64,000 bases of DNA from the IMG/VR virus record IMGVR_UViG_3300042691_042003, positions 62,001 to 126,000 of that record; one strand, given 5' to 3'. Made by a program: the position numbers and the translations under genes. Below are positions 2,250 through 63,604 of this stretch, piece after piece. The first letter of the stretch is position 1. Every line of letters begins with the position of its first letter. Below the pieces are notes generated by a model, which saw only the letters and a list, made by a program, of their open reading frames with translations, did not search any database and was not told where the DNA came from.

Positions 2250-2496
2250 AAAAATTTTACATATCTTAGAAAAGCCTAAAGCTAAAACCTATTATAAAAT
2301 CGTCGAGGATAAAGATGATCCTTGGTTTATATACATTCAGAAAATTGATAAAAAAACCAAAGAGATTCAAAAAAATTCAATGATAATTGCAAAAGATCTT
2401 GAAAGTCAATTAAAACTTATCAAATCCGATGGATGGGAGGAAACTTCCGAAGAACAACTTACATATAATATTAAAAATCAACAAGATAGAAAATGA
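2239..2496 (+). CDS. Hypothetical protein
   Basis: 85 aa ORF with ATGA overlap to next gene. Confidence 0.65.
   Translation: MKSEKILHILEKPKAKTYYKIVEDKDDPWFIYIQKIDKKTKEIQKNSMIIAKDLESQLKLIKSDGWEETSEEQLTYNIKNQQDRK
2458..2468 (+). promoter_or_regulatory. Candidate middle promoter CTTACATATAA upstream of clamp/polymerase operon
   Basis: Identical 11-mer at 5937 and 28973, near-identical at 49603, each just upstream of a replication gene. Confidence 0.55.
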
Positions 2497-5628: not shown

Positions 5629-5935
5629 AGATTCGATTAAGATTAAATATCTTATCGGCTCTTTTCGTGATGAACCAAATTATCCAACTTATGAAGATTT
5701 TCTTTTTCTAATGGAAAATTGGTTTTATCATGAAGATGGAAAACATTTTATTCACACATATAGAGCCGTAGAAGAAACAGGTAATCCTTGTTTTACGAAT
5801 AATATCCTTCAGGAAAAGCTAAACGGAGACGAGAAGATCACAAAAGATCTTCTCGATTCTCTATTAAATGAAGGTAAAATTAGAGTAATTAAAGAGACTC
5901 GTTTCACGACATATTATGAAATCCTAAAAAATTGA
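5618..5935 (+). CDS. Hypothetical protein (possible winged-helix C-terminus)
   Basis: ORF overlapping the uvsX stop; ATG at 5618 or 5621 preferred over TTG at 5609. Confidence 0.6.
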   Translation: MMNKDSIKIKYLIGSFRDEPNYPTYEDFLFLMENWFYHEDGKHFIHTYRAVEETGNPCFTNNILQEKLNGDEKITKDLLDSLLNEGKIRVIKETRFTTYYEILKN

Positions 5936-5936
5936 T

Positions 5937-5947
5937 CTTACATATAA
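5937..5947 (+). promoter_or_regulatory. Candidate middle promoter CTTACATATAA upstream of helicase
   Basis: Exact repeat of the motif, 19 nt before the ATG. Confidence 0.55.
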
Positions 5948-10486: not shown

Positions 10487-10496
10487 AATTGAGATA

Positions 10497-10505: not shown

Positions 10506-10517
10506 TAAATCTCAATT

Positions 10518-11618: not shown

Positions 11619-11652
11619 AACAAGATATATAAATTAAATAAAATTTTAGTCG

Positions 11653-12441: not shown

Positions 12442-12469
12442 AAAGATTATAATAAAAAAATCCATAAAA

Positions 12470-14029: not shown

Positions 14030-14030
14030 A

Positions 14031-14387
14031 ATGTACGTAAAACCTAAAGAATTCTATGAGGAAATTTGTATTTCCCTAGAACAAAAAAAGTTAACCAAAA
14101 AGGCACAGGATATGCTTATCCTTATTGCCTATAGAGCTAATACTAAGCTGACTTATGAAAACCCTATGGATAGGGAAGATTGTATTTCTTTTGCCCTTTT
14201 GGACCTTTTTAAATATTGGGATCGATTTAAACCTGAAAAAACAAAAAATGCGTTTGCTTTTTTTACACAAGTAGCAAAGAATGGTTATGCTAAAGGTTGG
14301 AATAAATTAAGACCTGGAAAATACAAAGGAACCATTTCTCTTAGTGGAAAAAGCAATGCAGATTCCGATGGAATATATTCTGTATAA
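14031..14387 (+). CDS. Late-transcription sigma factor (gp55-like)
   Basis: YVKPKEFYEEI start; REDCISFALLDLFKYWDRFKPEKTKNAFAFFTQVAKN matches the gp55 region-2 pattern. Confidence 0.8.
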   Translation: MYVKPKEFYEEICISLEQKKLTKKAQDMLILIAYRANTKLTYENPMDREDCISFALLDLFKYWDRFKPEKTKNAFAFFTQVAKNGYAKGWNKLRPGKYKGTISLSGKSNADSDGIYSV

Positions 14388-18259: not shown

Positions 18260-18297
18260 GTTTTTTATTCGAATATATAATATAATAATAGAAAAAT

Positions 18298-19911: not shown

Positions 19912-19956
19912 TATTCTCAGTTAACCCTTGATATATATAAAAAAATAGAAGCCTAA

Positions 19957-21801: not shown

Positions 21802-21894
21802 TCTAATCAAATAGATATATACTATAACGCAAAATCTGCTAAGACACAAAAAGCAAAAGGCGTAAATTAAAAACAAACAAAAATAAAATTAATT

Positions 21895-28258: not shown

Positions 28259-28313
28259 TGTTAATAAAAAATGTAAAAAAATTTTTTTATTTAGAGATTT
28301 TTTATTATATTTG
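28259..28313 (+). promoter_or_regulatory. Host-type early promoter
   Basis: TGTTAATAA 28259; TATATTTG (TAnnTTTG) 28306-28313. Confidence 0.72.
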
Positions 28314-28533: not shown

Positions 28534-28971
28534 ATGCAAATACAAAATTTATCATCTAGAAGGATTTCGGTTTATATCCGTAAAGCTAATCGTCTCCTTA
28601 AGAAAACAATCGAAGGAAAAGATCAAGATCTAAACGAAGTTCAAATTTCTTCTTATTCTCTTATTAAGAAGCTGATAAAGCATGACGATTCAGATTTGAT
28701 TTATTCTCCTATTTCAAACACATATTACATCGAAAATGGAGATTATTACGTTCGATTTACAAATAATTCTTTGACCGTCACGAATGGTAAATTTTCATAT
28801 TACGTTTGGTTACCGGACAAAAAAATGGAATCTCTACAATCCCTTTTTCATGCTAAACTTGAATCGAAAAAAGAAGTTTTAGATAAGAAGTACGATCGAA
28901 ATACTCTTAAAAGTTTCGAAGAAATTCATCAATCTCTTGAAAATAGAAGCTTCTTTGATACGGTGAAATAA
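28534..28971 (+). CDS. Hypothetical protein
   Basis: 145 aa ORF. Confidence 0.7.
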   Translation: MQIQNLSSRRISVYIRKANRLLKKTIEGKDQDLNEVQISSYSLIKKLIKHDDSDLIYSPISNTYYIENGDYYVRFTNNSLTVTNGKFSYYVWLPDKKMESLQSLFHAKLESKKEVLDKKYDRNTLKSFEEIHQSLENRSFFDTVK

Positions 28972-28972
28972 T

Positions 28973-28983
28973 CTTACATATAA
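28973..28983 (+). promoter_or_regulatory. Candidate middle promoter CTTACATATAA upstream of clamp loader
   Basis: Exact motif copy, 6 nt before the ATG. Confidence 0.55.
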
Positions 28984-33682: not shown

Positions 33683-33738
33683 TGTTAATAATTTTTTGGC
33701 TCGGCATTTTTTTATGTCGAGCTTTTTTATTATATTTG
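33683..33738 (+). promoter_or_regulatory. Host-type early promoter
   Basis: TGTTAATAA 33683; TATATTTG 33731-33738. Confidence 0.72.
33699..33728 (+). terminator. Rho-independent terminator ending the array, embedded in the promoter
   Basis: GCTCGGCAT...ATGTCGAGC stem followed by TTTTTT. Confidence 0.75.
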
Positions 33739-36021: not shown

Positions 36022-36351
36022 ATGAAAAGAACAAAAGCTCTACATAGAAAAATCATTAAAGAATATAAAGACGCTACACCATTTGAAATATGGGAAGGAC
36101 TAAGAGATAATTTTACTTTTGGATTTATCGGTGCTACTCTTGTAGTTTTTATCTCTACAAAAACAGATTTAGGAGTTTTATTTGGTTATTTAGCTTATTA
36201 CTTCTTTATGGGAAAAATAGTAAATAGGCCTAAGTATGTTACGGATTTAGGAAAATTAATTGTTTTTCCGATTCCTTCGGCTTTAGGAGCATTTACCGGA
36301 TATAAGGTCTCTTCATATCTGATAGAAACATTCATTCACAGTTTAAAATAA
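36022..36351 (+). CDS. Membrane protein
   Basis: ATG 36022; three hydrophobic segments. Confidence 0.7.
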   Translation: MKRTKALHRKIIKEYKDATPFEIWEGLRDNFTFGFIGATLVVFISTKTDLGVLFGYLAYYFFMGKIVNRPKYVTDLGKLIVFPIPSALGAFTGYKVSSYLIETFIHSLK

Positions 36352-36366
36352 TAGCATATAATATTT

Positions 36367-36777
36367 ATGGAACTATTCGATTTTACAAAAGTAATTTTTA
36401 CAAACCCAAAGGAATATACTAAAACAAAAAATTCTGAAAAGGCTAAACATTTTTTTATGATTCAAAGGTTTTTTAGTATAAAATTTCCTACAACCGCACA
36501 GTCTCTTAATAGAAATGGAATTAATCCTTGGGCTGTTATGGATCTTTGGCATATTGTAGGATCTCGTTTCCAGAAAGTGCCAGGGTGGATATATACAAAG
36601 ACAAAAAAAGTACAAACAGAAAAAACTTGGAAACCTAATCCAGAAATTTCTAGAATTTGGAAAGAAAGAAATGGATTAGGAGAAAGAGAACTTCAATTTG
36701 CAATTAAGTTTAATCCAGAAGAAATGAAGAAAAGTTTTTCACTGTTGGAAAAACAAATTATTATGGATGATAAGTGA
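36367..36777 (+). CDS. Probable clamp loader small subunit (gp62-like)
   Basis: ELFDF..., FMIQRFFS..F...AQSLN pattern and size. Confidence 0.55.
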   Translation: MELFDFTKVIFTNPKEYTKTKNSEKAKHFFMIQRFFSIKFPTTAQSLNRNGINPWAVMDLWHIVGSRFQKVPGWIYTKTKKVQTEKTWKPNPEISRIWKERNGLGERELQFAIKFNPEEMKKSFSLLEKQIIMDDK

Positions 36778-39710: not shown

Positions 39711-39863
39711 TTATCTACATATTATGTCTCTCATTTATAATAGTTTTTTCATTTATTTGAAACTCATCCCTTTTAAAAGTCATATAACCATTACAAGGAT
39801 TTCAGGTAAAGAAGAATATAGTAATTCAAGCCTCTTCTGAGATCATCCCAAAAAAATCAATTT

Positions 39864-40490
39864 ATGGATTCAGAGAACAAAGATAATCCTGCAAGAAGAT
39901 CTATAGAAGATCTACTTAATGAAGAAAACAATTTACCTACTCAATCAAGTAGTCTCCCTGCCTTTCAATTGAATGAGCCAGTAGATTATGATGAAATGAA
40001 AGCTTCTTCGATAAATAAATCAAAGAAGCTAATGAATTCTCTTCTTAAATTTTATCTCTCTCAAGAGCTAATAGATAATAATGAATATATTCAAGCTAAA
40101 GCAAAGCTTGAGATGATGACTCTTTCTAATTTAGTCAATCAAATGCAAATTGCTGAAAGAGCTATTACAACATTAATGAGAACTATCGATACAGGAGAAG
40201 TTACTCCTCGAATGTTTGAGGTTCTTGCAGGTCTTCAAAAGACAATGCTAGATATTATGAAACATCAAACTCTTCATATGATGGCTGCTGAAGAAAATAT
40301 GAAGAAGCTAAAAAGAGATATTGATGTTTATTCAAATACAATAGAAATTAAACCGAACCAAAAAATAGAATCAGGAAACGTTTCAAGAGGAACAAGAAAT
40401 TTAATGAAAGAGATTCAAGCTGAATTAGGAAATGAAGAAGACTCGGATGATCCTAATGATTTTGATTCTGATTCTCAAAATGAACTATGA
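39864..40490 (+). CDS. Terminase small subunit (gp16-like)
   Basis: PRMFEVLAGL helix and C-terminal GTRNLMKEI; position upstream of terL. Confidence 0.75.
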   Translation: MDSENKDNPARRSIEDLLNEENNLPTQSSSLPAFQLNEPVDYDEMKASSINKSKKLMNSLLKFYLSQELIDNNEYIQAKAKLEMMTLSNLVNQMQIAERAITTLMRTIDTGEVTPRMFEVLAGLQKTMLDIMKHQTLHMMAAEENMKKLKRDIDVYSNTIEIKPNQKIESGNVSRGTRNLMKEIQAELGNEEDSDDPNDFDSDSQNEL

Positions 40491-42971: not shown

Positions 42972-43007
42972 GATTCGAAGATATATAATTAAAAAATTAG
43001 ACAAAAA

Positions 43008-46000
43008 ATGGCAATTTCTCCTAGTCTACAACAATTTAAGTCTTCTGGTGTCTATCGATTAGAATTCGATAAAAGTCAGATTACTAATATCCCTTCAGAG
43101 ACTATCCGATTGATTATTGGATTTTCTAAAAAGGGACCTTTTAACACTCCTGTATTTGTTCAGGATAATGTCTTTTTTAAGGCTGTTTTCGGTGATATCG
43201 ATCCAGTATTAGAAAGAAAAGGATCTTTCTTCCATAGAACTGCTTTAACATGCTTAACAAGAGGTCCTGTTATCGTTCTAAATCTTCTTAATTTAGATGA
43301 CGATCAAGATACTTCTCAATACGTTTCTGTATCTACTTCTGCAACTGAAATAAATTCTCCTGTAGATTCTGCTCCAGTTTCTAAATATTTTAATACAGAT
43401 AAATTCTGGTTCGTTGATCCTAATGAATTATTAAATGTTGCTAATTTAGGAGCTTATCAATCTGCTTTTGCTACTAGATTAATTAATTTTGCTAATGTAG
43501 GAAGGAAACCAGTTTCAGTTATTACAAGAAGATCTGATCTTCTTGGTTATGATGTACTTGCTAAAGAATGGTTTAGTGCAGGAGCAGTACCTTTCTTTAT
43601 GAATGAAAATGATTACATTTCTGATTATTTAATTGATGTAATTATTCTTGAAGGTGATTTTACTAATTATACTAATCTTTCAATCGATCCTATTTTTGGT
43701 AATTATTTTAATACTACTGGTCTTAAAAAGACAATTATCGACGAATATGGCTTTGAAAGAGATGGTTTAAATACTTTCCTTGCTCTTCCTCAAGTAAATG
43801 TTTTAGGTGTTTATTCAGGTTCTATAATTCCTGATTTCCAAGATCAAAATAATAATAATATTTTTGTTCAGGATCTAGTTAATCTTGAAACTTCTAAAAC
43901 TGGTGTTCTTATGGCTATCAATAGAGATGCCTTCGACAATGATACTTATCAAATGGGAGGAGTAGCTGGAAGAGTTATTTCAGCTGATATCGTTGATTTA
44001 GTAGGACATACCGTAGAATCTGAACAACCAGGTATAATTAATTTCCTTTCTTATTATGGATCTATTATACAAGATTTAAATTATGCAAATAAATCCGGTA
44101 ATCCTTCTATCTATGCTACTAGTATCGTAGGATCTCCTGTTGCGGGAACTACTGCTAATGCACTTCTTCAAGCTTCTACTTCTCTTCAAGGAGTTGCTGG
44201 ATATACTACTGTAGGAGCTACTGGATATTTCGATAAAATTATAATTTACGGTCCTTCTGCAACTAGACCAGCAACCTTTACTTCTGCTTTCGCAACTAAG
44301 GCTGATCTTACTACTTTTGCAGATTCTATTTCTGCCGGTAATTCTTTTATTAAAGTAGATTTAAAGAGAACTTCTGGACCTACAGGTTCTGTTAATTTTG
44401 CAGCTGTAACTTCTAAAGATTATGATTCTACAGCTGAAACTTTAACTCTTCAAACTCAGTTAATATTAGATCCTTCTTCTACTTATTCTAATTTTATAAC
44501 AGGACCTACTAATGCTGATTATGCATTCTTCCATATTTCTGCTCCAGGAGTTTCTGCTAATGGAGGAACTTCTACAATAGGAATCATTAAAAATAATGAT
44601 TGGATTTTCCAAGAAGGAGGTTTAGTATATGGAGGACCTAATTCTGGAGTAAATACTGCATTTTTAGATGGTATAATTTCTGATGGTGATAGAATTTCTA
44701 TAAACGGTTTAACTGGATCTTCAGGAGTTTATAAATACATAGATTTTACTAATTCTATCACTAATGATTTTTCAGGAAGTACATTTAATGGAAGTACTAA
44801 AGCATTTCCTTCTGGATTAGCTCCAATTTTTAATAAAAATCTAAGCTATACTTTTATTAGTGCTTATGATACTGCTGATTTCATTGGATTTACTGCAATT
44901 TCTGCAACTGCTTCATTCCCTATTAAAACCTTAACTGATAATATTAATGAATCGTTAGAAGTAGATTCATCTATCACTCCTAATAATCCTACTAATGTTG
45001 TTTACTTTGATAATTCAGCTGCTGGTCCTTTAGGATTAGCTGGATTCTTAAGTTCTACTGAGAAAAAAATAATCAAAGGAGATTATTTAGTACAAAATTT
45101 CGGAGGAACTGATGCCCCTAACTATTTAGATACTTCTAAAACCGGTAAATCTAGATTAACTAAAGTTACTTCAGTTATAGAATTTACCGATCCTCTTTCA
45201 CCTTATTATCAAAAAATTAAGGTAACCACTAACGATCCTATTTATATAGATCCTGTAGATGGTACTGTAGAAAGATATAAGGATATCAGAAGCTTCTTCT
45301 CTTATTATCGTCCTGTAGCCCTTAACGGATATTCTTTAAGAGATGCTCAAATGCCAAATGGATCAGTTACTAGACAAAATCAGATTCTAGATGTAATGTA
45401 TAATTCTAATCTTGCTAACGCACTTACTGATAGAGAATTAATTACATTCCGTTATATTATCGATTCCTTTGAAGGAACTATTGAACCAGGAACTAAGGTT
45501 CGTCTTTCTAGACTTGCTAAAAATCGTCAGTCAGCATTAGCAATTTGCAATATGCCTTCGGTTAAACAATTCAAGAATAGTTCTAACCCAATATTTAAGT
45601 TCACTCCTACTTCATCTTTCGATGCAAAATATATTGCTACTGGAGGTAATCTTGATCTAGCTCCTTCTAACATATTCTCTTTACCAGGAATCGCTGATGG
45701 ATCTAACTTTGCCGCTTACTATGGACCTAATTTGATAATTAGAGAAAATGGTGCAAATGTTTCAGTTCCTCCTGCAGCTCACGTTTCTAATTTGTACATT
45801 GATAAGTATAATTTAGCACTTCCTTATTCAATCGTTGCAGGTCCACGTAGAGGAGTTGTAACTGGAACTGGATTAGTTGGAGTTGAATTTGCATTCGATA
45901 GAAATGATCTTGATTCAATCGAACCATTTGGTTATAATGCAATTCTTAATAAGAGAGGATTTGGATTAGTTATTAACGCTAATCAAACTGCTCAACAGAA

Positions 46001-46343
46001 TGTTAAATCTGCTCTTTCTCAAATACATGTTCGTGAATTAGTAATTTACATCCAAGACGGTATCGAGGCAATTCTTAAGAATTATCGTTGGGAATTCAAT
46101 AATGCTCAAAATCGTCTTGAAATTAAGACTCTTGCAGATAATTTCTTATCTCAGATTCTTACTGATGGAGGACTCTATGATTATCAAAACATCATGGATA
46201 CCACTAATAATACAAACGAAATTATTGATAGTAACATAGGTATTCTCGATACTTACATCGAGCCTGCTAGAGGAATGGGTATACTTGTACATCGTACAAC
46301 TATTCTTAGAACTGGAACTATCGCTACTGGTAATTTCCTATAA
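43008..46343 (+). CDS. Contractile tail sheath protein (gp18) with large central insertion
   Basis: SSGVYRLEFD, GFSKKGP.NTP, VPPA, AGPRRG, SALSQIHVREL, FNN...R. Confidence 0.92.
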   Translation: MAISPSLQQFKSSGVYRLEFDKSQITNIPSETIRLIIGFSKKGPFNTPVFVQDNVFFKAVFGDIDPVLERKGSFFHRTALTCLTRGPVIVLNLLNLDDDQDTSQYVSVSTSATEINSPVDSAPVSKYFNTDKFWFVDPNELLNVANLGAYQSAFATRLINFANVGRKPVSVITRRSDLLGYDVLAKEWFSAGAVPFFMNENDYISDYLIDVIILEGDFTNYTNLSIDPIFGNYFNTTGLKKTIIDEYGFERDGLNTFLALPQVNVLGVYSGSIIPDFQDQNNNNIFVQDLVNLETSKTGVLMAINRDAFDNDTYQMGGVAGRVISADIVDLVGHTVESEQPGIINFLSYYGSIIQDLNYANKSGNPSIYATSIVGSPVAGTTANALLQASTSLQGVAGYTTVGATGYFDKIIIYGPSATRPATFTSAFATKADLTTFADSISAGNSFIKVDLKRTSGPTGSVNFAAVTSKDYDSTAETLTLQTQLILDPSSTYSNFITGPTNADYAFFHISAPGVSANGGTSTIGIIKNNDWIFQEGGLVYGGPNSGVNTAFLDGIISDGDRISINGLTGSSGVYKYIDFTNSITNDFSGSTFNGSTKAFPSGLAPIFNKNLSYTFISAYDTADFIGFTAISATASFPIKTLTDNINESLEVDSSITPNNPTNVVYFDNSAAGPLGLAGFLSSTEKKIIKGDYLVQNFGGTDAPNYLDTSKTGKSRLTKVTSVIEFTDPLSPYYQKIKVTTNDPIYIDPVDGTVERYKDIRSFFSYYRPVALNGYSLRDAQMPNGSVTRQNQILDVMYNSNLANALTDRELITFRYIIDSFEGTIEPGTKVRLSRLAKNRQSALAICNMPSVKQFKNSSNPIFKFTPTSSFDAKYIATGGNLDLAPSNIFSLPGIADGSNFAAYYGPNLIIRENGANVSVPPAAHVSNLYIDKYNLALPYSIVAGPRRGVVTGTGLVGVEFAFDRNDLDSIEPFGYNAILNKRGFGLVINANQTAQQNVKSALSQIHVRELVIYIQDGIEAILKNYRWEFNNAQNRLEIKTLADNFLSQILTDGGLYDYQNIMDTTNNTNEIIDSNIGILDTYIEPARGMGILVHRTTILRTGTIATGNFL

Positions 46344-46378: not shown

Positions 46379-46422
46379 AATGACTTTAGATAAATAATTA
46401 AATTAAAAAAAGAAGATAAAAA

Positions 46423-46974
46423 ATGCCAGGTTTACCTCATTTTCTAAACAGTAAAGCAGCTACTAAGTTTTACGAACCGTATTATCAAAACCTATTTGAG
46501 GTTACTGTAATTCCTCCAGCAGTTGTTTCCGGAGGATCTATCCTCATCGAACATGTTAATAAGATTTCTGGTCTTAATCAAGACAGAGGAACCGAAATAA
46601 TTACTCAGAAATTTAAATTTGCTGAAAGGAATTATGCTTCTGGTGTTCCTACTGGTACTAGTACTGATTTAAAGATAGAATTCTCTATGAACTTTAACGA
46701 TGCAAATGAATTCTATGTTTATAAAACTCTTAGAGATTGGTGGAGATTAGTTTATAATCCTCTTACTGGTGAGCAAGGATTAAAGAAAGATTATATCGGT
46801 ACTGTTGTTGTTACAAACTTCAATCGTAAAGGAGATATTTGGTGGCAGAGAACTTTCTATAATTGCATTCCTATGTCAGATATTCCTGAATTAACTCACG
46901 ATTACGGTGGTGGTGAAACTCAAGCTCTAGAATTTGGATGGAAATCCGACTACTGGTCTGAGAATATAGTATAA
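46423..46974 (+). CDS. Tail tube protein (gp19)
   Basis: NLFEV, LRDW..LVYNPLTG, KKDY, FYNCIP, DYW; follows the sheath. Confidence 0.88.
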   Translation: MPGLPHFLNSKAATKFYEPYYQNLFEVTVIPPAVVSGGSILIEHVNKISGLNQDRGTEIITQKFKFAERNYASGVPTGTSTDLKIEFSMNFNDANEFYVYKTLRDWWRLVYNPLTGEQGLKKDYIGTVVVTNFNRKGDIWWQRTFYNCIPMSDIPELTHDYGGGETQALEFGWKSDYWSENIV

Positions 46975-47045: not shown

Positions 47046-48170
47046 ATGAAACCAAATCCAAAACCGGTCACTGGATATAGATTGCTTGTTTCTGAACCTT
47101 CGATGAATGATAGCACTGAACAATTCATTCAGGATATAAATGAAGTTTGGAATTCAAGATATCTTACAAATGGCGGACCTAAAGTAATACAATTCCAAGA
47201 AAGATTAAAAGAAAAATATGGATTTCCTAATATATCAGTAGTTGTAAATGGAACTGTAGCTTTACAATCTGCTATTAGATCTCTAAATCTCCCTAAAGGA
47301 GGGAATATTATTACAACACCTTTTACTTGGATATCTACAACATCTTCTATTATTTGGGAAGGATATAAACCTAGATTTGTTGATATAGATCCTTTTACTT
47401 TTAATATTGATCCTAAAAAAATAGAAGAAGCAATTGATGAAGATACGGTTGCTATTCTTGCTGTTCATGTTTTCTCTAATCCTTGTGCTATAGAAGAAAT
47501 TCGTACAATAGCTAATAAGCATGATCTGAAAGTTATATATGATGCCGCTCATGCCTTTGGTGTTCAATATAAAGGAAAAGATGTTTCTCTTTATGGAGAT
47601 ATTTCTATCCATTCTTATCATGCAACAAAAGTTTTTAATACAGGAGAAGGAGGAGCTGTAATTACTTCTGATCGTAAACTATGGGAAAGAATTGAACAAA
47701 TTAAAACTTGTGGTCTTAATGAAAAGAAAGAAATTGTAAGAATTGGTACTAATGCAAAAATTCATGAAATCACTGCTTGTATAGGACTAACTAATTTAGA
47801 AATTGTAGATAAATCAATTCAATACAGAAAAGAACTTTTCGAAAAATATTACGAAAATCTTAAAGACCTTGAAAAAGAAGGAAAAATACAATTTCAAAAA
47901 TTTAATAAAAGCTCTTATAATTTTTCTTATTTACCTATTGTTTTCAAAGATGAAGAAACCGTTATTAAGATAGATAAATCTCTACGAGAAGAACTAATTA
48001 TGTGTAGGAGATATTTTTATCCTTCTTTAAGTAGTCTTAAATGGGCTTATGGACAATCATGTCCTATATCTGAGGATATTTCAAAAAGAATCCTTTGTTT
48101 TCCTTCTCATGATAGAGTTACAAATGAAGATATAAAAATAATTTGTTCAAAAATTAAAGAATGTTTATGA
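47046..48170 (+). CDS. DegT/DnrJ/EryC1/StrS PLP-dependent sugar aminotransferase (VioA-like)
   Basis: LTNGGP, NGTVAL, ITTPFT, FVDID, YDAAHAFG, SYHATKVFNTGEGGA, GTNAK, RRYFYP. Confidence 0.93.
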   Translation: MKPNPKPVTGYRLLVSEPSMNDSTEQFIQDINEVWNSRYLTNGGPKVIQFQERLKEKYGFPNISVVVNGTVALQSAIRSLNLPKGGNIITTPFTWISTTSSIIWEGYKPRFVDIDPFTFNIDPKKIEEAIDEDTVAILAVHVFSNPCAIEEIRTIANKHDLKVIYDAAHAFGVQYKGKDVSLYGDISIHSYHATKVFNTGEGGAVITSDRKLWERIEQIKTCGLNEKKEIVRIGTNAKIHEITACIGLTNLEIVDKSIQYRKELFEKYYENLKDLEKEGKIQFQKFNKSSYNFSYLPIVFKDEETVIKIDKSLREELIMCRRYFYPSLSSLKWAYGQSCPISEDISKRILCFPSHDRVTNEDIKIICSKIKECL

Positions 48171-49602: not shown

Positions 49603-49619
49603 CTTACATATTATAAATA
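49603..49619 (+). promoter_or_regulatory. Candidate middle promoter (CTTACATATTA) overlapping a TATAAATA box
   Basis: Upstream of the topoisomerase large subunit gene. Confidence 0.5.
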
Positions 49620-49632: not shown

Positions 49633-51468
49633 ATGGAGACTGTAGAAATAAGTAAGAAGTATTCTCTACTAAACGAAATAGAACACGTTCTTAAAAGGCC
49701 AGGAATGTATGTGGGATCAACAAAACCACATGCTTCTTCTGAATTTCTTTTTAATAGAGAACGATTTGAAAAGAAAGAAGTTCAATACAATCCAGGATTC
49801 CTTAAACTTTTCGACGAAATTGTTTCTAATTCAGTAGATGAATCAAAAAGAAATTCTAATCTAAATTACATTCATGTAACTCTTAATGAGAAAACAGGAG
49901 AAATTTCAGTATGGGATAACGGTGGAATTCCTGTTATTATTCATACTGAACATAATATTTGGATTCCAGAACTGATTTTTTCTAATCTACGAGCAGGTTC
50001 TAATTTTGATGATACTCAATCAAGGACAGTTGCAGGAACAAATGGTGTAGGTGCTTCTCTTACTAATATTTTTTCTAAAAGATTTACAATTAAAACTGCA
50101 GACGGTAAAAATCAATTTGTTCAAACATTTTCAGAAAATATGTCTGAAAGAACAAAACCGAAAATTATCGAATCTGATAAAAAATTCACAGAAATTTCTT
50201 ATATAACCGATTTTAAACAATTCGGTATGGATCAAATCGATGAAACCCATATCGATATGATTCGTAAAAGACTTATAGATATTGCAGCTTGCAATCCTCA
50301 TCTAAAAGTACAATTTAATAACGAGAAATTTCGATTTAAAACATTTAAAGAATATGCTGATCTTTATGGTGAAGGCACATTCTATGAAAGATCTGAAAAT
50401 TGGGAAATTGCCTTTTGCCCGTCTAATTCAGGATTTCAATCAATTTCATTTGTAAATTCGATTGAGACAAAAGATGGTGGGACTCATGTAAACTTTATCA
50501 TGGGTCAGACAATTGATAAACTTCGTCATATGATTTGGAAAAAACATAAGGTTGATATTAAGCCTTCTGATATTAAAAATCACATAACGATTTTTATCAA
50601 TTGTACCGTCATCAATCCTTCTTTTTCTTCTCAAACTAAAGAAAAACTTATTACTGAAGTAAAAGATTTTGGATCTACTCATGTTATTTCTGATAAGCTA
50701 ATTAAAATTCTTTTTCAATCAGAAATTGTTGCTTCTATACTCGATTGGATTGAAAGAAAAAAACTTGCAGAAGAACGAGCTCAGTTAAGAAAATTAAATA
50801 AAGATCTTAATACAAGCAAGATTTTAAAGCTAATCGATGCAAAATCTAGAACAGAACGAGATAAATGTGTTTTAGGTATATTTGAAGGTGATTCAGCTAA
50901 ATCAGCAGTAAGACAATATCGAGATCCTCAAATATTTGGTGCTTTTCCTCTTAAAGGAAAATTTCTAAATGTTTCGGAAATGAAAAATACTGATGTAATA
51001 AAAAACGAAGAAGTTGTTAATCTTATGGGTTCTATAGGTCTTCGATTAGGTGAAGAACCTACAAATCTTCGTTATGGTAAAATTCTTATATTTACTGATG
51101 CTGATCCCGATGGTGATGCTATCGCTGCTCTTCTTCTAAATTTTTTCAATCGTTATTGGCCTGAACTTTTCGATCGAGGAATGATTTATCGAGTTCTTAC
51201 TCCTCTTGTTGTTGCAAAGAAAGGTAAATCAGTACAACAATTCTATTCAAAAGAAGAATATGTAGAATGGGAAAAGAAAACCGATACAAAAGGTTGGAAT
51301 GTAGAATACAAGAAAGGACTCGCTGCTCTTGAAGATGACGAGTATCAACAAATCATAACAAATCCTAAAACCGTTCAAATAAAGAATGATCCTCTTTTTA
51401 GAGAATCCCTTGATGCATGGTTTGGTGGAGATTCAAATAAACGTAAAACAAGACTTCTTAAATTTTAA
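49633..51468 (+). CDS. Type IIA DNA topoisomerase large subunit (gp39+gp60, GyrB-like)
   Basis: EHVLKRPGMYVGS, DEIVSNSVD, GTNGVG, EGDSA, PLKGK, TDADPDG, YKKGL. Confidence 0.96.
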   Translation: METVEISKKYSLLNEIEHVLKRPGMYVGSTKPHASSEFLFNRERFEKKEVQYNPGFLKLFDEIVSNSVDESKRNSNLNYIHVTLNEKTGEISVWDNGGIPVIIHTEHNIWIPELIFSNLRAGSNFDDTQSRTVAGTNGVGASLTNIFSKRFTIKTADGKNQFVQTFSENMSERTKPKIIESDKKFTEISYITDFKQFGMDQIDETHIDMIRKRLIDIAACNPHLKVQFNNEKFRFKTFKEYADLYGEGTFYERSENWEIAFCPSNSGFQSISFVNSIETKDGGTHVNFIMGQTIDKLRHMIWKKHKVDIKPSDIKNHITIFINCTVINPSFSSQTKEKLITEVKDFGSTHVISDKLIKILFQSEIVASILDWIERKKLAEERAQLRKLNKDLNTSKILKLIDAKSRTERDKCVLGIFEGDSAKSAVRQYRDPQIFGAFPLKGKFLNVSEMKNTDVIKNEEVVNLMGSIGLRLGEEPTNLRYGKILIFTDADPDGDAIAALLLNFFNRYWPELFDRGMIYRVLTPLVVAKKGKSVQQFYSKEEYVEWEKKTDTKGWNVEYKKGLAALEDDEYQQIITNPKTVQIKNDPLFRESLDAWFGGDSNKRKTRLLKF

Positions 51469-60462: not shown

Positions 60463-61218
60463 ATGGCTAGAAAATCCAAATCTCTTTCTCAAGAAGAACA
60501 ACAAGAAATTTTTGATTCTATTATGAATCAACCTAATCAATCTCTTAAAAATGCAAAAATCGATTTAAAATTTAAAAATCCTAATCAAAAACTTTTTGCT
60601 GAGTATATAGAAGAAAAGGAGGTTATAATTTGTTCTGGACCTGCAGGAACCGGTAAAACTTATATTGCTTGTGCTCAAGCACTTAAGCTTCTTAAAAATG
60701 ATGAACGTTTTAAAAAGATTTATATTGTAAAATCAGTTACAACTCTTAAGGATGAAGAAATTGGTTATTTAAAAGGCTCTATGGAAGAAAAGATGGAGCC
60801 TTTTGTGTATTCTTTTATTCATAATTTTGAAAAGATCGTAGGTAAATCGGTTATTAATTCTATGAAAGAAAATGGCACAATACAAATTATGCCGATTGCT
60901 TATTTAAGAGGGATAAATTTTGATGATTGTATAGTTCTTATTGACGAATGTCAAAACATTACACCTGATAATATGCATACAATTATGACTCGTTTAGGAT
61001 CTAATTGTAAGATGATTTTTATGGGAGATGCTGCTCAGATAGATCTCAGAAATAAAAGAAATTCTTCTCTTCAGCTAATTATGGATCGTTTTTCTAGATT
61101 AACAGAATTTGGATGTATGAATTTTTCTAATCATGATATTGTTAGAAATCCTCTAATCAAGAAAATAGAAGAAATATTTAATAACATTTCTGAAACTAGT
61201 AAAAAGCCACAATCATAA
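60463..61218 (+). CDS. phoH: PhoH-family ATPase
   Basis: GPAGTGKT, IGYLKG, YLRG, DECQN, TRLG, GD..QID, DIVRNP. Confidence 0.94.
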   Translation: MARKSKSLSQEEQQEIFDSIMNQPNQSLKNAKIDLKFKNPNQKLFAEYIEEKEVIICSGPAGTGKTYIACAQALKLLKNDERFKKIYIVKSVTTLKDEEIGYLKGSMEEKMEPFVYSFIHNFEKIVGKSVINSMKENGTIQIMPIAYLRGINFDDCIVLIDECQNITPDNMHTIMTRLGSNCKMIFMGDAAQIDLRNKRNSSLQLIMDRFSRLTEFGCMNFSNHDIVRNPLIKKIEEIFNNISETSKKPQS

Positions 61219-61230
61219 AATTAAAAAAGC

Positions 61231-61740
61231 ATGAAAACATTTTTTACGAGTGATACTCTATTTGGGAGAAATTATATAGCTCTTGAAAGAGGATTTGAAT
61301 CTGAAGAAGAAATGGCTGATGCTTATATCACAAATTGGAATGAAAAAATTTCTAAAGAAGATATTGTCTATCATCTAGGAAATTTTTCTTGGGATCCGAT
61401 TTCTTGTGAAAGTACTATGTCCGTTTTAAATGGTAAAATCCATTTTATTATGGGACCTTACGATACACATCTTCCTCAAATGTCTATGATTAAATTAAAT
61501 AGACATGTAATTGTTCAAAATCAAATTTCTTACATACATAATAAAAAAGCAATTATTTCTCATTGGCCTCTTTTAGATTGGCCAGGTAAAGAAGAAGGAA
61601 TAATACATGTACATGGAGGTAATTTTGAAACCGAAGCAAAACTAAATTCTTTCCGATTTAATGCTAACATTAGCTCTTGGAATAGTGGACCTATTGAACT
61701 AGATTTTCTTTTAGATATCGTTAAATCATACAATTCATGA
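61231..61740 (+). CDS. Calcineurin-like metallophosphoesterase homologue with degenerate metal ligands
   Basis: FTSDTLFG, WNE.I...D.VYHLGNF, GPYD, SHWP, HVHGG. Confidence 0.75.
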   Translation: MKTFFTSDTLFGRNYIALERGFESEEEMADAYITNWNEKISKEDIVYHLGNFSWDPISCESTMSVLNGKIHFIMGPYDTHLPQMSMIKLNRHVIVQNQISYIHNKKAIISHWPLLDWPGKEEGIIHVHGGNFETEAKLNSFRFNANISSWNSGPIELDFLLDIVKSYNS

Positions 61741-62126: not shown

Positions 62127-62181
62127 TGTTAATAACTTTTTCAAAACTATTTTTATTTTTGGAATATATTTATTATATTTG
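62127..62181 (+). promoter_or_regulatory. Host-type early promoter upstream of the phage sigma gene
   Basis: TGTTAATAA 62127; TATATTTG 62174-62181. Confidence 0.72.
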
Positions 62182-62198
62182 TATATCTTAAAATTCAT

Positions 62199-62807
62199 AT
62201 GGCAAAAAAACAAAAAACAGATTCTCTCAAAGATCTCGGCTATCAGTTTAAGCAAACTCGATCCGAAAAAGTATTTACCGAGCTTTATAATCGAATCAGA
62301 CCAGGACTTTATAATTACATTTTCCAAATCGTTAAGAATAATGACGATACCGAAAATCTAATTTCTCACGTAATGTCTACTGTCTATAACAAGATCGATA
62401 CATACGACCCTAAATGGCATATTTCAACTTGGATTTATCGAATTGCTTATACATGCGCTTGCATGGAATTACGCTTCCGTAAAGCAAGAAAAATCACTCA
62501 TATGTCTCAATTAGAACAATCAGAAAACAAAAATCTGATCTCTAAAATCGAATTCGAATCTCTTGAAACTTATAAAGATGATCTAATTCTTAACGAAGAA
62601 ATTCAAGAGAAAGAAAACGATACGAATCGTCTACATTCTATTATCAAAAATCTACCTGAAGAATATCGAATCGTAATTGAAGAAAAATTCTTTAACGATA
62701 TGAAATATGATGAAATTGCACAAAAGCTAAACATACCTCTTCATACTGTTAAAAACCGAATCTCTCGAGGAAAAAGAATTATTAAAGAGAAGTACGGGAA
62801 TATATAA
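62199..62807 (+). CDS. Sigma-70 family (ECF-like) RNA polymerase sigma factor
   Basis: Region 2 FTELYNR...YDP...STWIYRIA; region 4 LPEEYR....MKYDEIAQKLNIPLHTVKNRISRG. Confidence 0.92.
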   Translation: MAKKQKTDSLKDLGYQFKQTRSEKVFTELYNRIRPGLYNYIFQIVKNNDDTENLISHVMSTVYNKIDTYDPKWHISTWIYRIAYTCACMELRFRKARKITHMSQLEQSENKNLISKIEFESLETYKDDLILNEEIQEKENDTNRLHSIIKNLPEEYRIVIEEKFFNDMKYDEIAQKLNIPLHTVKNRISRGKRIIKEKYGNI

Positions 62808-62820
62808 ATAAAAAGGATTC

Positions 62821-63117
62821 ATGAAAAATACAAAACTTCCTTCTTTCAAAGAATTTAATAAGACTTTTGAAGATGTAAAAGTTGAAGAAGCTATGGGTGT
62901 TGCTTCTAAAAAGCTACAAAAGGCAACTGAAGAATTCCATAGTGCTCAATTAGAACTTCAAAAGCTACAAAAACAATTTGTAGGTCTTGCTAAAGATGAT
63001 TCAAAAAGAGAAAGCATGAAACAAAGCATCCTTAATCAGCATAAAATAGTAAAACAAAAGGAAGCAATATTTGCTAAAGCTCTCGGTGATGAAGATATTG
63101 AAGACCTTGAAATCTAA
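62821..63117 (+). CDS. Coiled-coil protein with leader-like N-terminus (MKNTKLPSFKEF)
   Basis: Late-type AATATATAA upstream; VEE/A site. Confidence 0.62.
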   Translation: MKNTKLPSFKEFNKTFEDVKVEEAMGVASKKLQKATEEFHSAQLELQKLQKQFVGLAKDDSKRESMKQSILNQHKIVKQKEAIFAKALGDEDIEDLEI

Positions 63118-63121
63118 ATTA

Positions 63122-63604
63122 ATGTGGTTTAATTTTTGGAAATGGCCTAAAGAACTAATTGACGATTATCGTCAATGGTCTGTAGTTAAAGAAGCTTTAC
63201 AAGAAGAAGATACAAAGCAGAAATTCGCAAATTTTAAATATGAAATGCGAATTGATAAAATAGGAAGAATATACACGGTTATTAATGTACCCGATGAACT
63301 TCTTCCTTTCGAATTTCGTAATCAAGTTTGGCCTTGGGTTTTAGATCAATTAAGAGAAATAGATGAACTTCTTCTTTCTTGTAGATTAAATGATTTAGTT
63401 TATCCTGAAGTACAAAAACTTGAAGAATATCCTGCATATTTAGTAGTTCTCACTCCTTCTACCGAATCTTTGGAGTGGGCCAAATTTTTTGGTTGGATTT
63501 TTAATTGTGTATTTACTTCTTCGTTTCTTTTCCTTACAAATAAGATAATTACAAAAACAACAGAAAAGTCTGCTATAGATTTTATTATATCTCTTTTTAA
63601 TTGA
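63122..63604 (+). CDS. Hypothetical protein with C-terminal hydrophobic segment
   Basis: ATG 63122; RIDKIGRIYTVINVP. Confidence 0.68.
   Translation: MWFNFWKWPKELIDDYRQWSVVKEALQEEDTKQKFANFKYEMRIDKIGRIYTVINVPDELLPFEFRNQVWPWVLDQLREIDELLLSCRLNDLVYPEVQKLEEYPAYLVVLTPSTESLEWAKFFGWIFNCVFTSSFLFLTNKIITKTTEKSAIDFIISLFN

What the first reader, a model, noticed from the sequence alone, without database searches (positions are those of the whole stretch)
62127..62807. Three-tier sigma cascade: host sigma, phage ECF-like sigma, gp55
Seen: the ECF-like sigma gene sits right behind a host-type TAnnTTTG promoter; a second motif (CTTACATAT(A/T)A) precedes replication genes; a third (RATAWATA) precedes structural genes, and a gp55-like sigma is at 14031. 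Known: T4 uses MotA/AsiA with host sigma70 for middle transcription, whereas SPO1 uses a phage sigma cascade. Inference: this T4-like phage uses its own group-4 sigma for middle transcription, and all three promoter classes are readable in this window.
Basis: partly seen in the sequence, partly recalled or inferred. Interest (0 to 1): 0.72.

Follow-up and report, generated by a model that had tools for sequence, protein, structure and literature searches.

The report
Phage sigma cascade with three promoter classes
An uncultured 246-kb phage of a Bacteroidota-type host carries its own ECF-type sigma factor behind a host-type early promoter, and two further conserved promoter classes (a two-part ECF-style one before DNA-replication genes, a T4-late-style one before virion genes) that fit a host sigma, then phage ECF sigma, then gp55 relay.

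Summary
ORF 62199-62807 is a 202-aa sigma with regions 2 and 4 only; its closest solved relative is B. subtilis SigW. ORF 14031-14387 is a gp55-type late sigma. No MotA, AsiA or RNA polymerase gene was found.

- **Early class (E):** the sigma gene sits behind a TATATTTG box inside a long consensus shared by about 28 promoters. This arrangement is kept in six of six relatives, down to 49% identity.
- **Middle class (M):** It occurs 32 times on the + strand against about 4 by chance, and 21 of the 32 lie within 50 nt of a start codon. It precedes helicase, clamp loader, topoisomerase, SSB, dUTPase and exonuclease genes.
- **Late class (L):** GATA(T/A)ATAA has no upstream element and precedes portal, protease, capsid, sheath and tube genes.

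All three classes recur in a 294-kb relative, and M and L also in a 462-kb one. Orthologous genes keep their class.

Caveats:
- There is no transcript or biochemical evidence.
- A third phage sigma (238 aa) lies outside the window.
- No clear promoter for the gp55-like gene was found.
- The phage is a Lak/PAU-type jumbo phage with a T4-like replication module, not a classical T4-like phage.

The parts
62127..62136 (+). TGTTAATAAC box (palindrome GTTA-N-TAAC) about 45 nt upstream of the -7 box of the sigma gene's promoter. Candidate regulator site.
   Evidence: Invariant in the window and three relatives at 70% protein identity, and present in L041. In relative G001, TGTTAATAA occurs 39 times on + and 4 on -, in front of most E promoters.
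62170..62184 (+). Early (E) promoter core of the sigma gene, TTATTATATTTGTA with the -7 box TATATTTG at 62174-62181. The expected start site is about 5 nt after the G.
   Evidence: Matches the Bacteroidota consensus TAHHTTTG (T-12 A-11 T-8 T-7 T-6 G-5; PMC6847099). An E-class core precedes the orthologue in six of six relatives down to 49% identity: four with TATATTTG, one with TATATTAG and one with a TATTTTTA variant. Part of the roughly 28-member E consensus.
62199..62807 (+). ECF-type (group 4) sigma factor, 202 aa, proposed middle-gene sigma.
   Evidence: The family has at least 138 clusters at 49-93% identity, on contigs up to 326 kb. The region 4.2 helix TVKNRI.RG and the region 2 motif I(S/T)TW(I/L)Y.IAY are conserved even at 27% identity.
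61191..61220 (+). Near-consensus M promoter (TGAAAC-N17-CATAAAA) before ORF 61231-61740, two genes upstream of the sigma gene. Possible autoregulatory read-through.
   Evidence: Orthologous M promoters occur in G001 and L041.
2441..2468 (+). M promoter (AAAC-N17-CATATAA) before ORF 2493-3239, which overlaps the start of the DNA polymerase ORF 3236-4432.
5920..5947 (+). M promoter before the gp41-type replicative helicase (5967-7265).
28958..28983 (+). M promoter before the gp44-type clamp loader (28990-29943). The C of CATATAA is 13 nt from the ATG, a leaderless-type arrangement.
   Evidence: The orthologue in G001 is also class M.
49603..49613 (+). M-like -10 (CTTACATATTA, a variant core) before the topoisomerase II large subunit (49633-51468).
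   Evidence: Topoisomerase orthologues in L039, L040 and LR756500 carry a full (T)GAAAC-N16-CATATAA.
36334..36361 (+). M promoter before ORF 36367-36777.
   Evidence: The orthologue in G001 is class M.
39760..39787 (+). Strong M promoter (TGAAACT-N16-CATATAA) followed by a conserved ~45-nt leader, one of three copies of this element in the genome.
14031..14387 (+). gp55-type late sigma, 118 aa, with a region-2-like domain only.
   Evidence: phrog_234 5e-11; weak Sigma70_r2 match; tblastn to annotated gp55 genes; 84% identical orthologue in G001.
18272..18280 (+). L promoter variant (cgAATATATAA) before the portal gene (18298-19911).
19930..19940 (+). L promoter (GATATATATAA) before the prohead protease gene (19957-21801).
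   Evidence: The orthologue in G001 is class L.
21814..21822 (+). L-like motif (GATATATAC) about 80 nt before the major capsid gene (21895-23529).
42980..42988 (+). L promoter (GATATATAA) before the tail sheath gene (43008-46343).
   Evidence: Class L in G001 and LR756500.
46389..46397 (+). L promoter (GATAAATAA) before the tail tube gene (46423-46974).
62799..62811 (+). L-variant motif (AATATATAAATAA) overlapping the sigma stop codon, before ORF 62821-63117.
63089..63604 (+). Conserved ORF downstream of the sigma gene, 171-177 aa depending on the start codon, with a C-terminal hydrophobic segment. Candidate partner or anti-sigma, untested.
   Evidence: Found downstream of the sigma gene in every relative at 46-57% identity, immediately so in three of them. 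No Pfam hit. The complex prediction gave no verdict.
28305..28313 (+). E promoter core (TTATATTTG) in the window. Others lie at 1432, 33730 and 48616.

Best explanation
The phage has no RNA polymerase of its own and re-programs the host core enzyme by swapping sigma factors.

Step 1 (inferred from sequence and conservation). Host primary sigma of the Bacteroidota type reads about 28 early promoters with a TAtaTT(T/A)G -7 box in a long conserved context. These often directly follow a hairpin plus T-run terminator. One of them drives the 202-aa ECF-type sigma gene at 62199.

Step 2 (inferred). This sigma, which has regions 2 and 4 only, directs core RNA polymerase to two-part middle promoters.
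- Region 4 reads the -35 element (a/g)AA(a/t)C(t).
- After 16 (15-17) nt, region 2 reads the -10 element CATATAA(T).
- These promoters precede the replication, recombination and nucleotide-metabolism genes.
- In many of them the -10 C lies exactly 12-14 nt before the ATG, which implies leaderless or near-leaderless mRNAs.
- An M-type promoter two genes upstream of the sigma gene may add positive feedback.

Step 3 (inferred by homology with T4). The 118-aa gp55-type sigma has no region 4. It reads single-element late promoters, GATA(T/A)ATAA, with no -35, in front of head and tail genes.

Not resolved: how the gp55-like gene itself is switched on, and what the extra 238-aa sigma does.
For: Gene identities:
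- MotA, AsiA and the RNA polymerase beta subunit gave no match.

The M class is two-part:
- A -35 position matrix learned in one genome and tested in the other separates gene-proximal M sites from non-promoter CATATAA copies (p=0.004 and 3e-5) and from L sites (p=6e-4 and 1e-4).
- The best -35 hit sits at one fixed offset.
- The regex A[AT][ACT]C-N15-17-CATATAA gives 32 on + and 7 on - against 4.2 in shuffles in this genome, and 46 and 4 against 5.5 in G001. In this genome 21 of the 32 sites, and in G001 28 of the 46, end within 50 nt of a start, where 6-7% is expected.

Fit to ECF sigmas:
- ECF promoters typically carry AAC in the -35 and have 14-17-nt spacers. The closest solved relative, SigW, reads TGAAAC...CGTA (PMC5758882).

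The L class has no upstream element. This matches a sigma that lacks region 4.

Function split:
- M precedes helicase, clamp loader, topoisomerase II, SSB, dUTPase and exonuclease genes.
- L precedes portal, protease, capsid, sheath and tube genes.

Conservation:
- Orthologous genes keep their class between this genome and G001: 21 of 24 class-bearing pairs, at a mean 58% amino-acid identity.
- M and L also recur in LR756500, at a mean 39% identity.
- The sigma gene follows an E-class promoter in six of six relatives.
- G001 has M promoters but no homologue of the 238-aa sigma. The ECF-like sigma is therefore the only region-4-bearing phage sigma common to all M-bearing genomes, and its DNA-reading helices are conserved.

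Geometry:
- There is a hard minimum of about 12 nt between the M core and the ATG, with a pile-up at 12-14 nt in both genomes. This is what a -10 element predicts.
Against: - There is no transcript 5'-end or biochemical data. The only 'RNA' runs holding the sequence are probably DNA and are kept as contigs.
- The -35 element is recognisable in only about two thirds of M sites.
- The -10 element (CATATAA) is unlike the CGT-type -10 of most ECF sigmas.
- M and L cores differ at only two positions (TACATATAA against GATATATAA), so overlap in recognition cannot be excluded.
- The gp55-like gene sits inside an L-promoter cluster with no clear E or M promoter before it.
- G001 is 91% complete, so the absence of the 238-aa sigma there is not absolute.
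- The host is unknown. 'Host-type' rests on the published Bacteroidota consensus, the lack of Shine-Dalgarno sequences and the hosts of relatives.
- Gene starts came from my own simple ORF caller.
Confidence: 0.6

Rival explanations
1. Two tiers only. M and L are variants of one gp55-dependent promoter family (core ATATAA). The ECF-like sigma controls some other, unrecognised small regulon, or host genes.
For: The cores differ at only two positions. The gp55-like gene lies among L promoters. No ECF-typical CGT -10 is seen.
Against: - G at position 1 never co-occurs with C at position 3 (20 against 0).
- Only M has the fixed-offset AAaC element.
- The distance distributions to the ATG differ.
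- M and L partition by gene function, and the class is kept across orthologues.
- gp55-type proteins have no region 4 with which to read a -35.
Confidence: 0.1
2. M promoters are read by another sigma: the phage's 238-aa RpoD/RpoS-like sigma, a host ECF sigma, or host primary sigma re-targeted by an unknown phage appropriator analogous to MotA/AsiA.
For: The genome does hold a second region-4-bearing sigma from a widespread family. CATATAAT contains TATAAT. Bacteroidota carry many ECF sigmas (general knowledge).
Against: - G001 keeps 46 two-part M sites but has no homologue of the 238-aa sigma.
- The M -10 is unlike the host TAHHTTTG box, and MotA/AsiA-type appropriation changes only -35 reading (established T4 knowledge).
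- M is constant across three phages of 24-33% GC, whose hosts probably differ.
Confidence: 0.12
3. Four tiers. In addition to the relay above, the 238-aa sigma reads the variant early promoters TATATTAGCTATATCAAATTAA (about 20 copies), which break the nearly invariant T-6 of the host -7 box. This would give an immediate-early and a delayed-early split.
For: - The variant is sharply conserved, and it is identical in front of the sigma orthologue in L042.
- T-6 is nearly invariant in F. johnsoniae promoters.
- The 238-aa sigma gene lies in an operon behind such a promoter.
Against: - The canonical and variant forms replace each other at the orthologous position in front of the sigma gene and share the same upstream context.
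- G001 has its own off-consensus variant (TAGTTTTAC) without having this sigma.
Confidence: 0.15
4. The motifs are not promoters. They could be AT-rich intergenic composition, translation-initiation signals or RNA-processing sites.
For: The genome is 31% GC. Single short motifs such as TAnnTTTG or RATAWATA are frequent by chance. Many M cores sit very close to the ATG.
Against: - The two-part M pattern is 7-8 times above dinucleotide shuffles and strongly strand-biased.
- The distance to the ATG ranges from 12 to about 50 nt with a hard minimum, which is not a fixed translational spacing.
- Three distinct classes segregate by gene function and are kept across orthologues.
Confidence: 0.03

Closest known systems
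Bacteriophage T4 temporal programme (early sigma70; middle MotA/AsiA plus sigma70; late gp55/gp33/gp45)
   Same: - Host RNA polymerase is used throughout.
- There are three promoter classes.
- A gp55-type late sigma pairs with an A/T-rich single-element late promoter resembling TATAAATA.
- The replication genes (gp41, gp44, gp32, gp46/47, UvsX, topoisomerase II) sit behind the middle class.
- The gp46/47 genes lie near gene 55.
   Different: - MotA and AsiA are absent.
- The middle class has its own -10 and an ECF-type -35, which implies sigma replacement rather than sigma appropriation.
- The gp55-like protein is much shorter: 118 aa against 185 aa in T4 (the T4 length is from my own knowledge).
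- The capsid is of the Lak/PAU/pT24 type.
- The early promoters are of the Bacteroidota type.
Bacillus phage SPO1 sigma cascade (host sigma A, then gp28, then gp33/34)
   Same: The logic is a relay of phage-encoded sigma factors replacing the host sigma on host core enzyme for the middle and late classes (PMC13401047 abstract).
   Different: The proteins are unrelated. Here the middle sigma is an ECF-type two-domain sigma and the late one is gp55-type. Homology to gp28, gp33 or gp34 was not tested.
phiEco32 / phage 7-11 group: phage-encoded sigma for middle and late genes
   Same: A small phage-encoded sigma drives non-early genes from phage-specific promoters. In phage 7-11 the sigma gene is predicted to be reached from both host-type and phage-type promoters (PMC4331800), as is possible here.
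   Different: - Those are roughly 70-80-kb podoviruses of enterobacteria (the 77-kb genome size of the related phage SU10 is's abstract; the rest is my own knowledge).
- Their reported phage-specific motifs (core TGATGT in 7-11) are essentially single -10-like elements.
- They have no gp55-type third tier.
Group 2 jumbo phages of Iyer et al. 2021 (PMC7824862), which include Lak megaphages and Tenacibaculum phage PTm1
   Same: The gene-content pattern was already described there: no RNA polymerase, a gp23-type capsid, a minimal sigma, a fuller cellular-type sigma and gp33. This phage's capsid and gp55 relatives fall in that group.
   Different: In the passages of that paper I read no promoters are described and no sigma is assigned to a gene class. 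The fuller sigma is described there as RpoD-like. Here the conserved one is ECF-type, and an RpoD/RpoS-like one is accessory.
Cellular ECF sigma factors, e.g. B. subtilis SigW (PDB 5wuq)
   Same: - Two-domain architecture, aligned over residues 22-198.
- A similar region 4.2 helix.
- The proposed cognate promoters have (T)GAAAC-type -35 elements and a 16-nt spacer, as for SigW.
   Different: - The -10 is CATATAA(T), not CGTA.
- Identity is low and all equivalog cut-offs are missed.
- The gene is driven by a host-type promoter.
- A cognate anti-sigma has not been shown.

Membership tests
ECF (group 4) sigma-70 family | Only regions 2 and 4 present; no region 1.1 or region 3; about 200 aa. | tested here: met
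   Pfam r2 plus r4_2 and r4 only. TIGR02937 scores 80.9 bits against a cut-off of 42.9. End-to-end alignment to SigW, RpoE and SigH structures.
ECF (group 4) sigma-70 family | Cognate promoters have an AAC-containing -35 and a spacer of 14-17 nt. | tested here: met
   The candidate regulon (M) has (a/g)AA(a/t)C with a 16-nt spacer, cross-validated in two genomes and seen in a third. The link between sigma and promoter is inferred, not measured. The criterion is from PMC5758882.
ECF (group 4) sigma-70 family | Group-specific -10, commonly CGT-type. | tested here: not met
   The M -10 is CATATAA(T). It shares only an invariant leading C.
ECF (group 4) sigma-70 family | Autoregulation: own promoter upstream of the sigma operon. 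| tested here: inconclusive
   Immediately upstream is an E-type promoter, not an M one. A near-consensus M promoter lies two genes upstream, at 61191-61220, and at the orthologous place in G001 and L041. Read-through is untested.
ECF (group 4) sigma-70 family | A co-encoded anti-sigma factor. | tested here: inconclusive
   A conserved downstream ORF with a C-terminal hydrophobic segment exists, but it has no Pfam domain and the complex prediction gave no verdict.
gp55-type late sigma (T4 gene 55 family) | Sequence homology to gp55. | tested here: met
   phrog_234 5e-11. tblastn hits to annotated gp55 genes of cyanophages, a Pelagibacter phage and phiM12 at 26-44% identity.
gp55-type late sigma (T4 gene 55 family) | Region-2-like domain only, with no region 4. 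| tested here: met
   118 aa, with only a weak Sigma70_r2 match over residues 29-86. No r4 hit at this locus.
gp55-type late sigma (T4 gene 55 family) | Late promoters consist of a single A/T-rich -10 element (TATAAATA in T4) without a -35. | tested here: met
   L is GATA(T/A)ATAA with no conserved upstream element, and it lies before virion genes. The assignment to this protein is inferred.
gp55-type late sigma (T4 gene 55 family) | Works with the gp33 co-activator and the gp45 sliding clamp. | not tested
   I did not identify gp33 or gp45 orthologues. ORFs next to gp55 and gp44 gave no family hits.
Classical T4-like phages (MotA/AsiA middle mode) | MotA activator and AsiA anti-sigma present. 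| tested here: not met
   PF09114 and PF09010 gave no match at E<=10 in the 246-kb genome.
Classical T4-like phages (MotA/AsiA middle mode) | Capsid and genome closely related to Tevenvirinae. | tested here: not met
   The best capsid relatives are LR756500 (55%), Lak megaphages (40%), pT24 and PAU (32-33%). There is no nucleotide match in the phage collection.
Bacteroidota primary-sigma promoters (-33 TTTG / -7 TAnnTTTG) | A -7 box TAHHTTTG with nearly invariant T-12, A-11, T-8, T-7, T-6 and G-5. | tested here: met
   The sigma gene's promoter and 6 others in this genome, and most E promoters of G001, carry TATATTTG. About 20 E promoters of this genome instead have TATATTAG, which breaks T-6. 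The criterion is from PMC6847099.
Bacteroidota primary-sigma promoters (-33 TTTG / -7 TAnnTTTG) | Recognised by the host holoenzyme. | not testable with these tools
   The host is unknown and no transcript data are available.

The most novel reading that the evidence does not exclude
A whole clade of uncultured jumbo and huge Bacteroidota phages, reaching towards the Lak megaphages, runs a multi-sigma programme with three unusual features:
- An ECF-type sigma replaces the MotA/AsiA middle mode and fires largely leaderless middle mRNAs.
- A further RpoD/RpoS-like phage sigma reads the off-consensus 'TATATTAG' early promoters as a fourth tier.
- The conserved membrane-anchored ORF behind the ECF sigma gene acts as its anti-sigma, which times or gates the middle-to-late switch.
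Probability: 0.1. Interest if true: 0.8.

Novelty: new variant of a known kind. Interest (0 to 1): 0.6.

Why it matters
How phages with T4-type replication modules but no MotA/AsiA run middle transcription is largely unresolved. Transcription in Bacteroidota jumbo phages and megaphages is, as far as I could find, undescribed.

This genome offers a concrete, testable answer: an ECF-type phage sigma with a defined two-part promoter (AAaC-N16-CATATAAT), plus a gp55-type late class. Both classes and both sigma genes are conserved in every relative examined, and the ECF sigma itself belongs to a family of more than 100 metagenomic relatives.

It also yields three orthogonal promoter and sigma sets that could serve as genetic parts for Bacteroidota, where E. 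coli parts do not work. And it gives a promoter grammar for annotating gene timing in uncultured huge phages.

Tried and rejected
- **Nucleotide search.** Megablast of the region against 50,697 phage records gave no match.
- **Transcript evidence.** Only two runs labelled RNA hold 7-9% of the words. The tool flags them as probably DNA. They are contigs without direction or 5' ends and match at 90-99% identity, so relatives are mixed in. No start sites could be read.
- **Sigma plus downstream ORF, residues 1-131.** The complex prediction scored 0.00 and returned no verdict. It counts neither for nor against binding.
- **Promoter for the gp55-like gene.**
  - No exact M or E site lies within 4 kb upstream in either genome.
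  - No convincing terminator lies between the helicase M promoter (5920) and gp55, so read-through is possible but unproven.
  - One near-M site (GAAAC at 13946, CATATGA at 13967) recurs in G001, but both halves are also codons of conserved residues.
- **Co-variation test in LR756500.** I hoped a diverged sigma (27% identity) would come with a changed M motif. Instead both the motif and the DNA-reading helices are conserved. That is consistent with the model but does not discriminate.
- **Test of whether the 238-aa sigma tracks the TATATTAG variant.** The records behind L039, L041 and L042 are not held, so this could not be done.
- **TAnnTTTG or RATAWATA as stand-alone evidence.** Rejected, because the counts are near chance.
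- **The generic sigma70 promoter scan.** It is at background: 65 hits against 59 in shuffles.
Full report
**What the window is**

The window is bases 62001-126000 of a single 246,081-bp IMG/VR virus record with direct terminal repeats. The record is 31% GC, and 307 of my 314 called ORFs lie on the + strand.

The replication and recombination genes are T4-type:
- gp41 helicase, gp44 clamp loader and UvsX;
- gp46/47-like SbcCD and gp32-like SSB;
- topoisomerase II and the RNR large subunit.

The major capsid protein is closest to the uncultured 462-kb phage LR756500 (55%). After that come Prevotella Lak megaphages (40%), Tenacibaculum phage pT24 and Sphingomonas phage PAU (about 32%). No nucleotide-level relative exists in the phage collection.

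Shine-Dalgarno-like 4-mers are depleted upstream of starts (5% against 11% at random positions), and those regions are A-rich. That fits Bacteroidota-type translation initiation (PMC6847099). The sequence recurs in 'fungus metagenome' and freshwater runs. So this is an uncultured jumbo myovirus of the 'group 2' type of Iyer et al. (PMC7824862), with a T4-like replication and late-transcription module.

**Checking the observation**

The sigma gene:
- ORF 62199-62807 encodes 202 aa with Sigma70_r2 and Sigma70_r4_2 and nothing else.
- It matches phrog_1740 and passes the NCBIfam sigma70-ECF superfamily cut-off.
- It aligns end to end with solved ECF sigmas, best with B. subtilis SigW (1.4e-15).

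The gp55-like gene:
- ORF 14031-14387 encodes 118 aa and matches phrog_234 'late sigma transcription factor' (5e-11).
- It also matches annotated gp55 genes of T4-like cyanophages, a Pelagibacter phage and phiM12.

All four copies are on the + strand, in the window, and 17-35 nt before an ATG. The four downstream genes are the helicase, the clamp loader, the topoisomerase II large subunit, and an ORF fused to the DNA polymerase ORF.

MotA, AsiA and an RNA polymerase beta subunit are not detectable.

**The early class (E)**

TAnnTTTG by itself is near chance. The sigma gene's TATATTTG (62174-62181) is credible because it is embedded in a consensus of about 45 nt shared by about 28 sites genome-wide. 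That consensus has a T-run, cTTTGcga, and tTTgTaTTATATT(T/A)G. Many of these sites directly follow a hairpin plus T-run. Many also carry either a palindromic TGTTAATAAC box or an ATGTAATATCCGTGTA box further upstream.

The box fits the published Bacteroidota -7 element TAHHTTTG. In F. johnsoniae the -33 element is weak and A/T-rich motifs sit at -18 and -28.

Upstream of the sigma orthologue, TGTTAATAAC and TTTATTATATTTGTA are the only conserved intergenic blocks in three relatives at 70% protein identity. An E-class promoter precedes the orthologue in all six relatives examined, down to 49% identity.

In one relative (L042) the promoter is the variant TATATTAGCTATATCAAATTAA, which is the majority form (about 20 copies) in this genome. 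The canonical and variant forms therefore replace each other at one orthologous position. Even so, the variant breaks the nearly invariant T-6 and remains unexplained.

**The middle class (M)**

K-mer enrichment in intergenic DNA and inspection of all upstream regions show that the real motif is CATATAA(T).

Information profiles then revealed a second element. A C lies 17 nt upstream of the C of CATATAA, within (a/g)AA(a/t)C(t), in both this genome and relative G001.

I tested this by cross-validation. A position matrix learned in one genome and scored in the other places the best hit at one offset (-21) in most sites. It separates gene-proximal M sites from CATATAA copies elsewhere (p=0.004 and 3e-5) and from L sites (p=6e-4 and 1e-4).

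The regex A[AT][ACT]C-N15-17-CATATAA gives these counts:

| Genome | + strand | - strand | Shuffle mean | + sites ending within 50 nt of a start |
|---|---|---|---|---|
| This genome | 32 | 7 | 4.2 | 21 (6.4% of positions qualify) |
| G001 | 46 | 4 | 5.5 | 28 |

In LR756500 (24% GC), 21 of 29 gene-proximal CATATAA copies carry the element, and those I listed read AAAC.

This geometry is that of ECF promoters, which have AAC in the -35 and a 14-17-nt spacer. The closest solved relative, SigW, reads TGAAAC...CGTA (PMC5758882).

A further internal check is the distance to the start codon. The C of CATATAA is never closer than about 12 nt to the ATG, and it piles up at 12-14 nt (14 of 32 sites here, 13 of 46 in G001). 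That is what a -10 element at -12 to -5 predicts, and it implies that many middle mRNAs are leaderless.

**The late class (L)**

The core is GATA(T/A)ATAA, with a cGAATATATAA variant. It occurs 23 times on + and 2 on - here, and 28 and 3 in G001 (GATATATAA alone is 22 and 0 in G001). It has no conserved upstream element and typically lies 21-30 nt before the ATG.

It precedes the portal, prohead protease, major capsid, tail sheath and tail tube genes. It is kept before the same orthologues in G001 and LR756500.

It resembles the T4 late promoter TATAAATA. A single-element promoter is what a sigma without region 4 would read.

**Are M and L really different?**

Aligned, the cores are TACATATAA and GATATATAA. 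Four observations argue that they are distinct classes:
- Among gene-proximal sites, G at position 1 goes only with T at position 3 (20 against 0).
- Only M has the -35 element.
- The distances to the ATG differ.
- Of the annotated downstream genes, M has six in DNA or nucleotide metabolism, one aminotransferase and one baseplate hub. L has five virion genes and no DNA-metabolism gene.

Between this genome and G001 there are 169 reciprocal best hits at a mean 58% identity. Genes that carry a class in both genomes agree in 21 of 24 cases: E-E 5, M-M 7, L-L 9.

**Which sigma reads M?**

The whole genome holds three sigma-like genes, not two:
- the ECF-like one;
- the gp55-like one;
- a 238-aa protein at genome 165467-166183, outside the window, with regions 1.2, 2 and 4 and RpoS/RpoD/RpoH-like scores.

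That third sigma belongs to a large metagenomic family. It sits in a variable region without G001 orthologues, and G001 has no homologue of it. G001 nevertheless has the full M class.

LR756500 has five sigma-like genes, including an orthologue of the ECF-like one at only 27% identity. That orthologue keeps the region 4.2 helix TVKNRI.RG and the region 2 motif I(S/T)TW(I/L)Y.IAY.

The ECF-like sigma is therefore the only region-4-bearing phage sigma common to the three genomes that share M. This comparative inference, together with the ECF-style promoter geometry, is the basis for assigning M to it. It is an inference, not a measurement.

**Weak points**

- The gp55-like gene lies in a cluster with L promoters and has no clear E or M promoter. 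No convincing terminator separates it from the helicase M promoter 8 kb upstream. One conserved near-M site inside the preceding ORF is confounded by coding constraints.
- A near-consensus M promoter (TGAAAC-N17-CATAAAA, 61191-61220) lies two genes upstream of the sigma gene, and at the same place in G001 and L041. Feedback by read-through is possible but unproven.
- The conserved ORF behind the sigma gene has a C-terminal hydrophobic segment, as many anti-sigma factors do. It has no domain hit, and the complex prediction gave no verdict.
- The public 'RNA' runs were uninformative.

**Comparison with what is known**

The programme works like the SPO1 sigma relay and like the T4 late mode. Its middle mode works like the phage-sigma systems of phiEco32 and phage 7-11. 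The difference is a genuine two-part ECF-type promoter.

That group 2 jumbo phages lack an RNA polymerase and carry a minimal sigma plus a fuller sigma was already noted. In my literature searches I found no description of the three promoter classes, no assignment of an ECF-type sigma to replication genes, and no mention of the leaderless arrangement.

I therefore rate it a new variant of a known kind, of moderate to good interest. It is well supported in silico and directly testable.

Noticed in passing
Genome 165467-166183 (L001:1366-2082), outside the window: A third phage sigma gene, 238 aa, with regions 1.2, 2 and 4 and RpoS/RpoD/RpoH-like scores. It lies in an early-type operon within a variable region. 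It is absent from relative G001 but belongs to a large metagenomic family (951 hits at E<=1e-8). Its role is unknown.
   Followed up: partly
Genome-wide, e.g. genome 163345, 175695, 176188, 200259, 203415; window 1432: About 20 early-type promoters use TATATTAGCTATATCAAATTAA instead of TATATTTG, which breaks the nearly invariant T-6 of the Bacteroidota -7 box. The identical variant precedes the sigma orthologue in relative L042. G001 has a different off-consensus variant (GATTAGTTTTACTTATAATTAAAA).
   Followed up: partly
Window 62127-62136, and near 1395, 28265 and 33690; many sites in G001: A palindromic box TGTTAATAAC (GTTA-N-TAAC) lies about 45-50 nt upstream of the -7 box of one subset of E promoters. 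Another subset has ATGTAATATCCGTGTA(CC/AT), which overlaps the stop codon of the preceding gene. Both look like regulator sites.
   Followed up: no
Window 1405-1431 and 33700-33729; many sites in G001: E promoters are often fused to a perfect hairpin with a T-rich loop followed by a T-run, so that a terminator-like structure directly abuts the -7 box.
   Followed up: no
Window 39760-39870; genome 191101-191200 (+) and about 47830-47945 (-): There are three copies of an element made of a strong M promoter (TGAAACT-N16-CATATAA) plus a conserved ~45-nt transcribed segment (CCATTACAAGGaTTTCAgGTAAAgaAGAATAcAGT). One copy is on the otherwise almost gene-free minus strand. It could be a leader or a small RNA.
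   Followed up: no
Genome-wide M promoters, e.g. window 28977 and 36355: The C of CATATAA lies exactly 12-14 nt before the ATG at 14 of 32 sites here and 13 of 46 in G001, with a hard minimum near 12. This suggests that many middle mRNAs are leaderless.
   Followed up: partly
Window 62821-63117 and 63089-63604: The 98-aa coiled-coil-like ORF behind the sigma gene exists only in this genome and G001, and has an L-type motif overlapping the sigma stop codon. The next ORF (about 171-177 aa, with a C-terminal hydrophobic segment) lies downstream of the sigma gene in all relatives, immediately so in three. In L042 it has its own M promoter.
   Followed up: partly
Window 13946-13973: GAAAC-N16-CATATGA lies inside the ORF preceding the gp55-like gene, 64 nt before its ATG. 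The same arrangement occurs at the orthologous place in G001. It may be a weak internal middle promoter, or merely conserved codons (E-T and H-M).
   Followed up: partly
Window 2493-4432: The DNA polymerase match (ORF 3236-4432, 398 aa) covers only the C-terminal part of the polymerase profiles. It overlaps the end of a 248-aa ORF of unclear identity. The polymerase may be split or unusually organised, and the same arrangement occurs in G001.
   Followed up: no
Window 5967-14387: The gene order is gp41 helicase, a 154-aa ORF, gp47-like SbcD, gp46-like SbcC, three unknown ORFs (two with L promoters), then the gp55-like gene. This recalls the 46/47/55 neighbourhood of T4.
   Followed up: no
LR756500.1 (loci L044-L048): This 462-kb, 24% GC relative carries five sigma-like genes: four with region 2 above the Pfam cut-off, plus a gp55-like one. 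Multi-sigma programmes may be general in this clade.
   Followed up: partly
L040:2984-5823: In one relative the topoisomerase IV/gyrase-A-like gene is interrupted by an intein-splicing domain and an extra ORF. The near-identical contig L039 has it intact.
   Followed up: no
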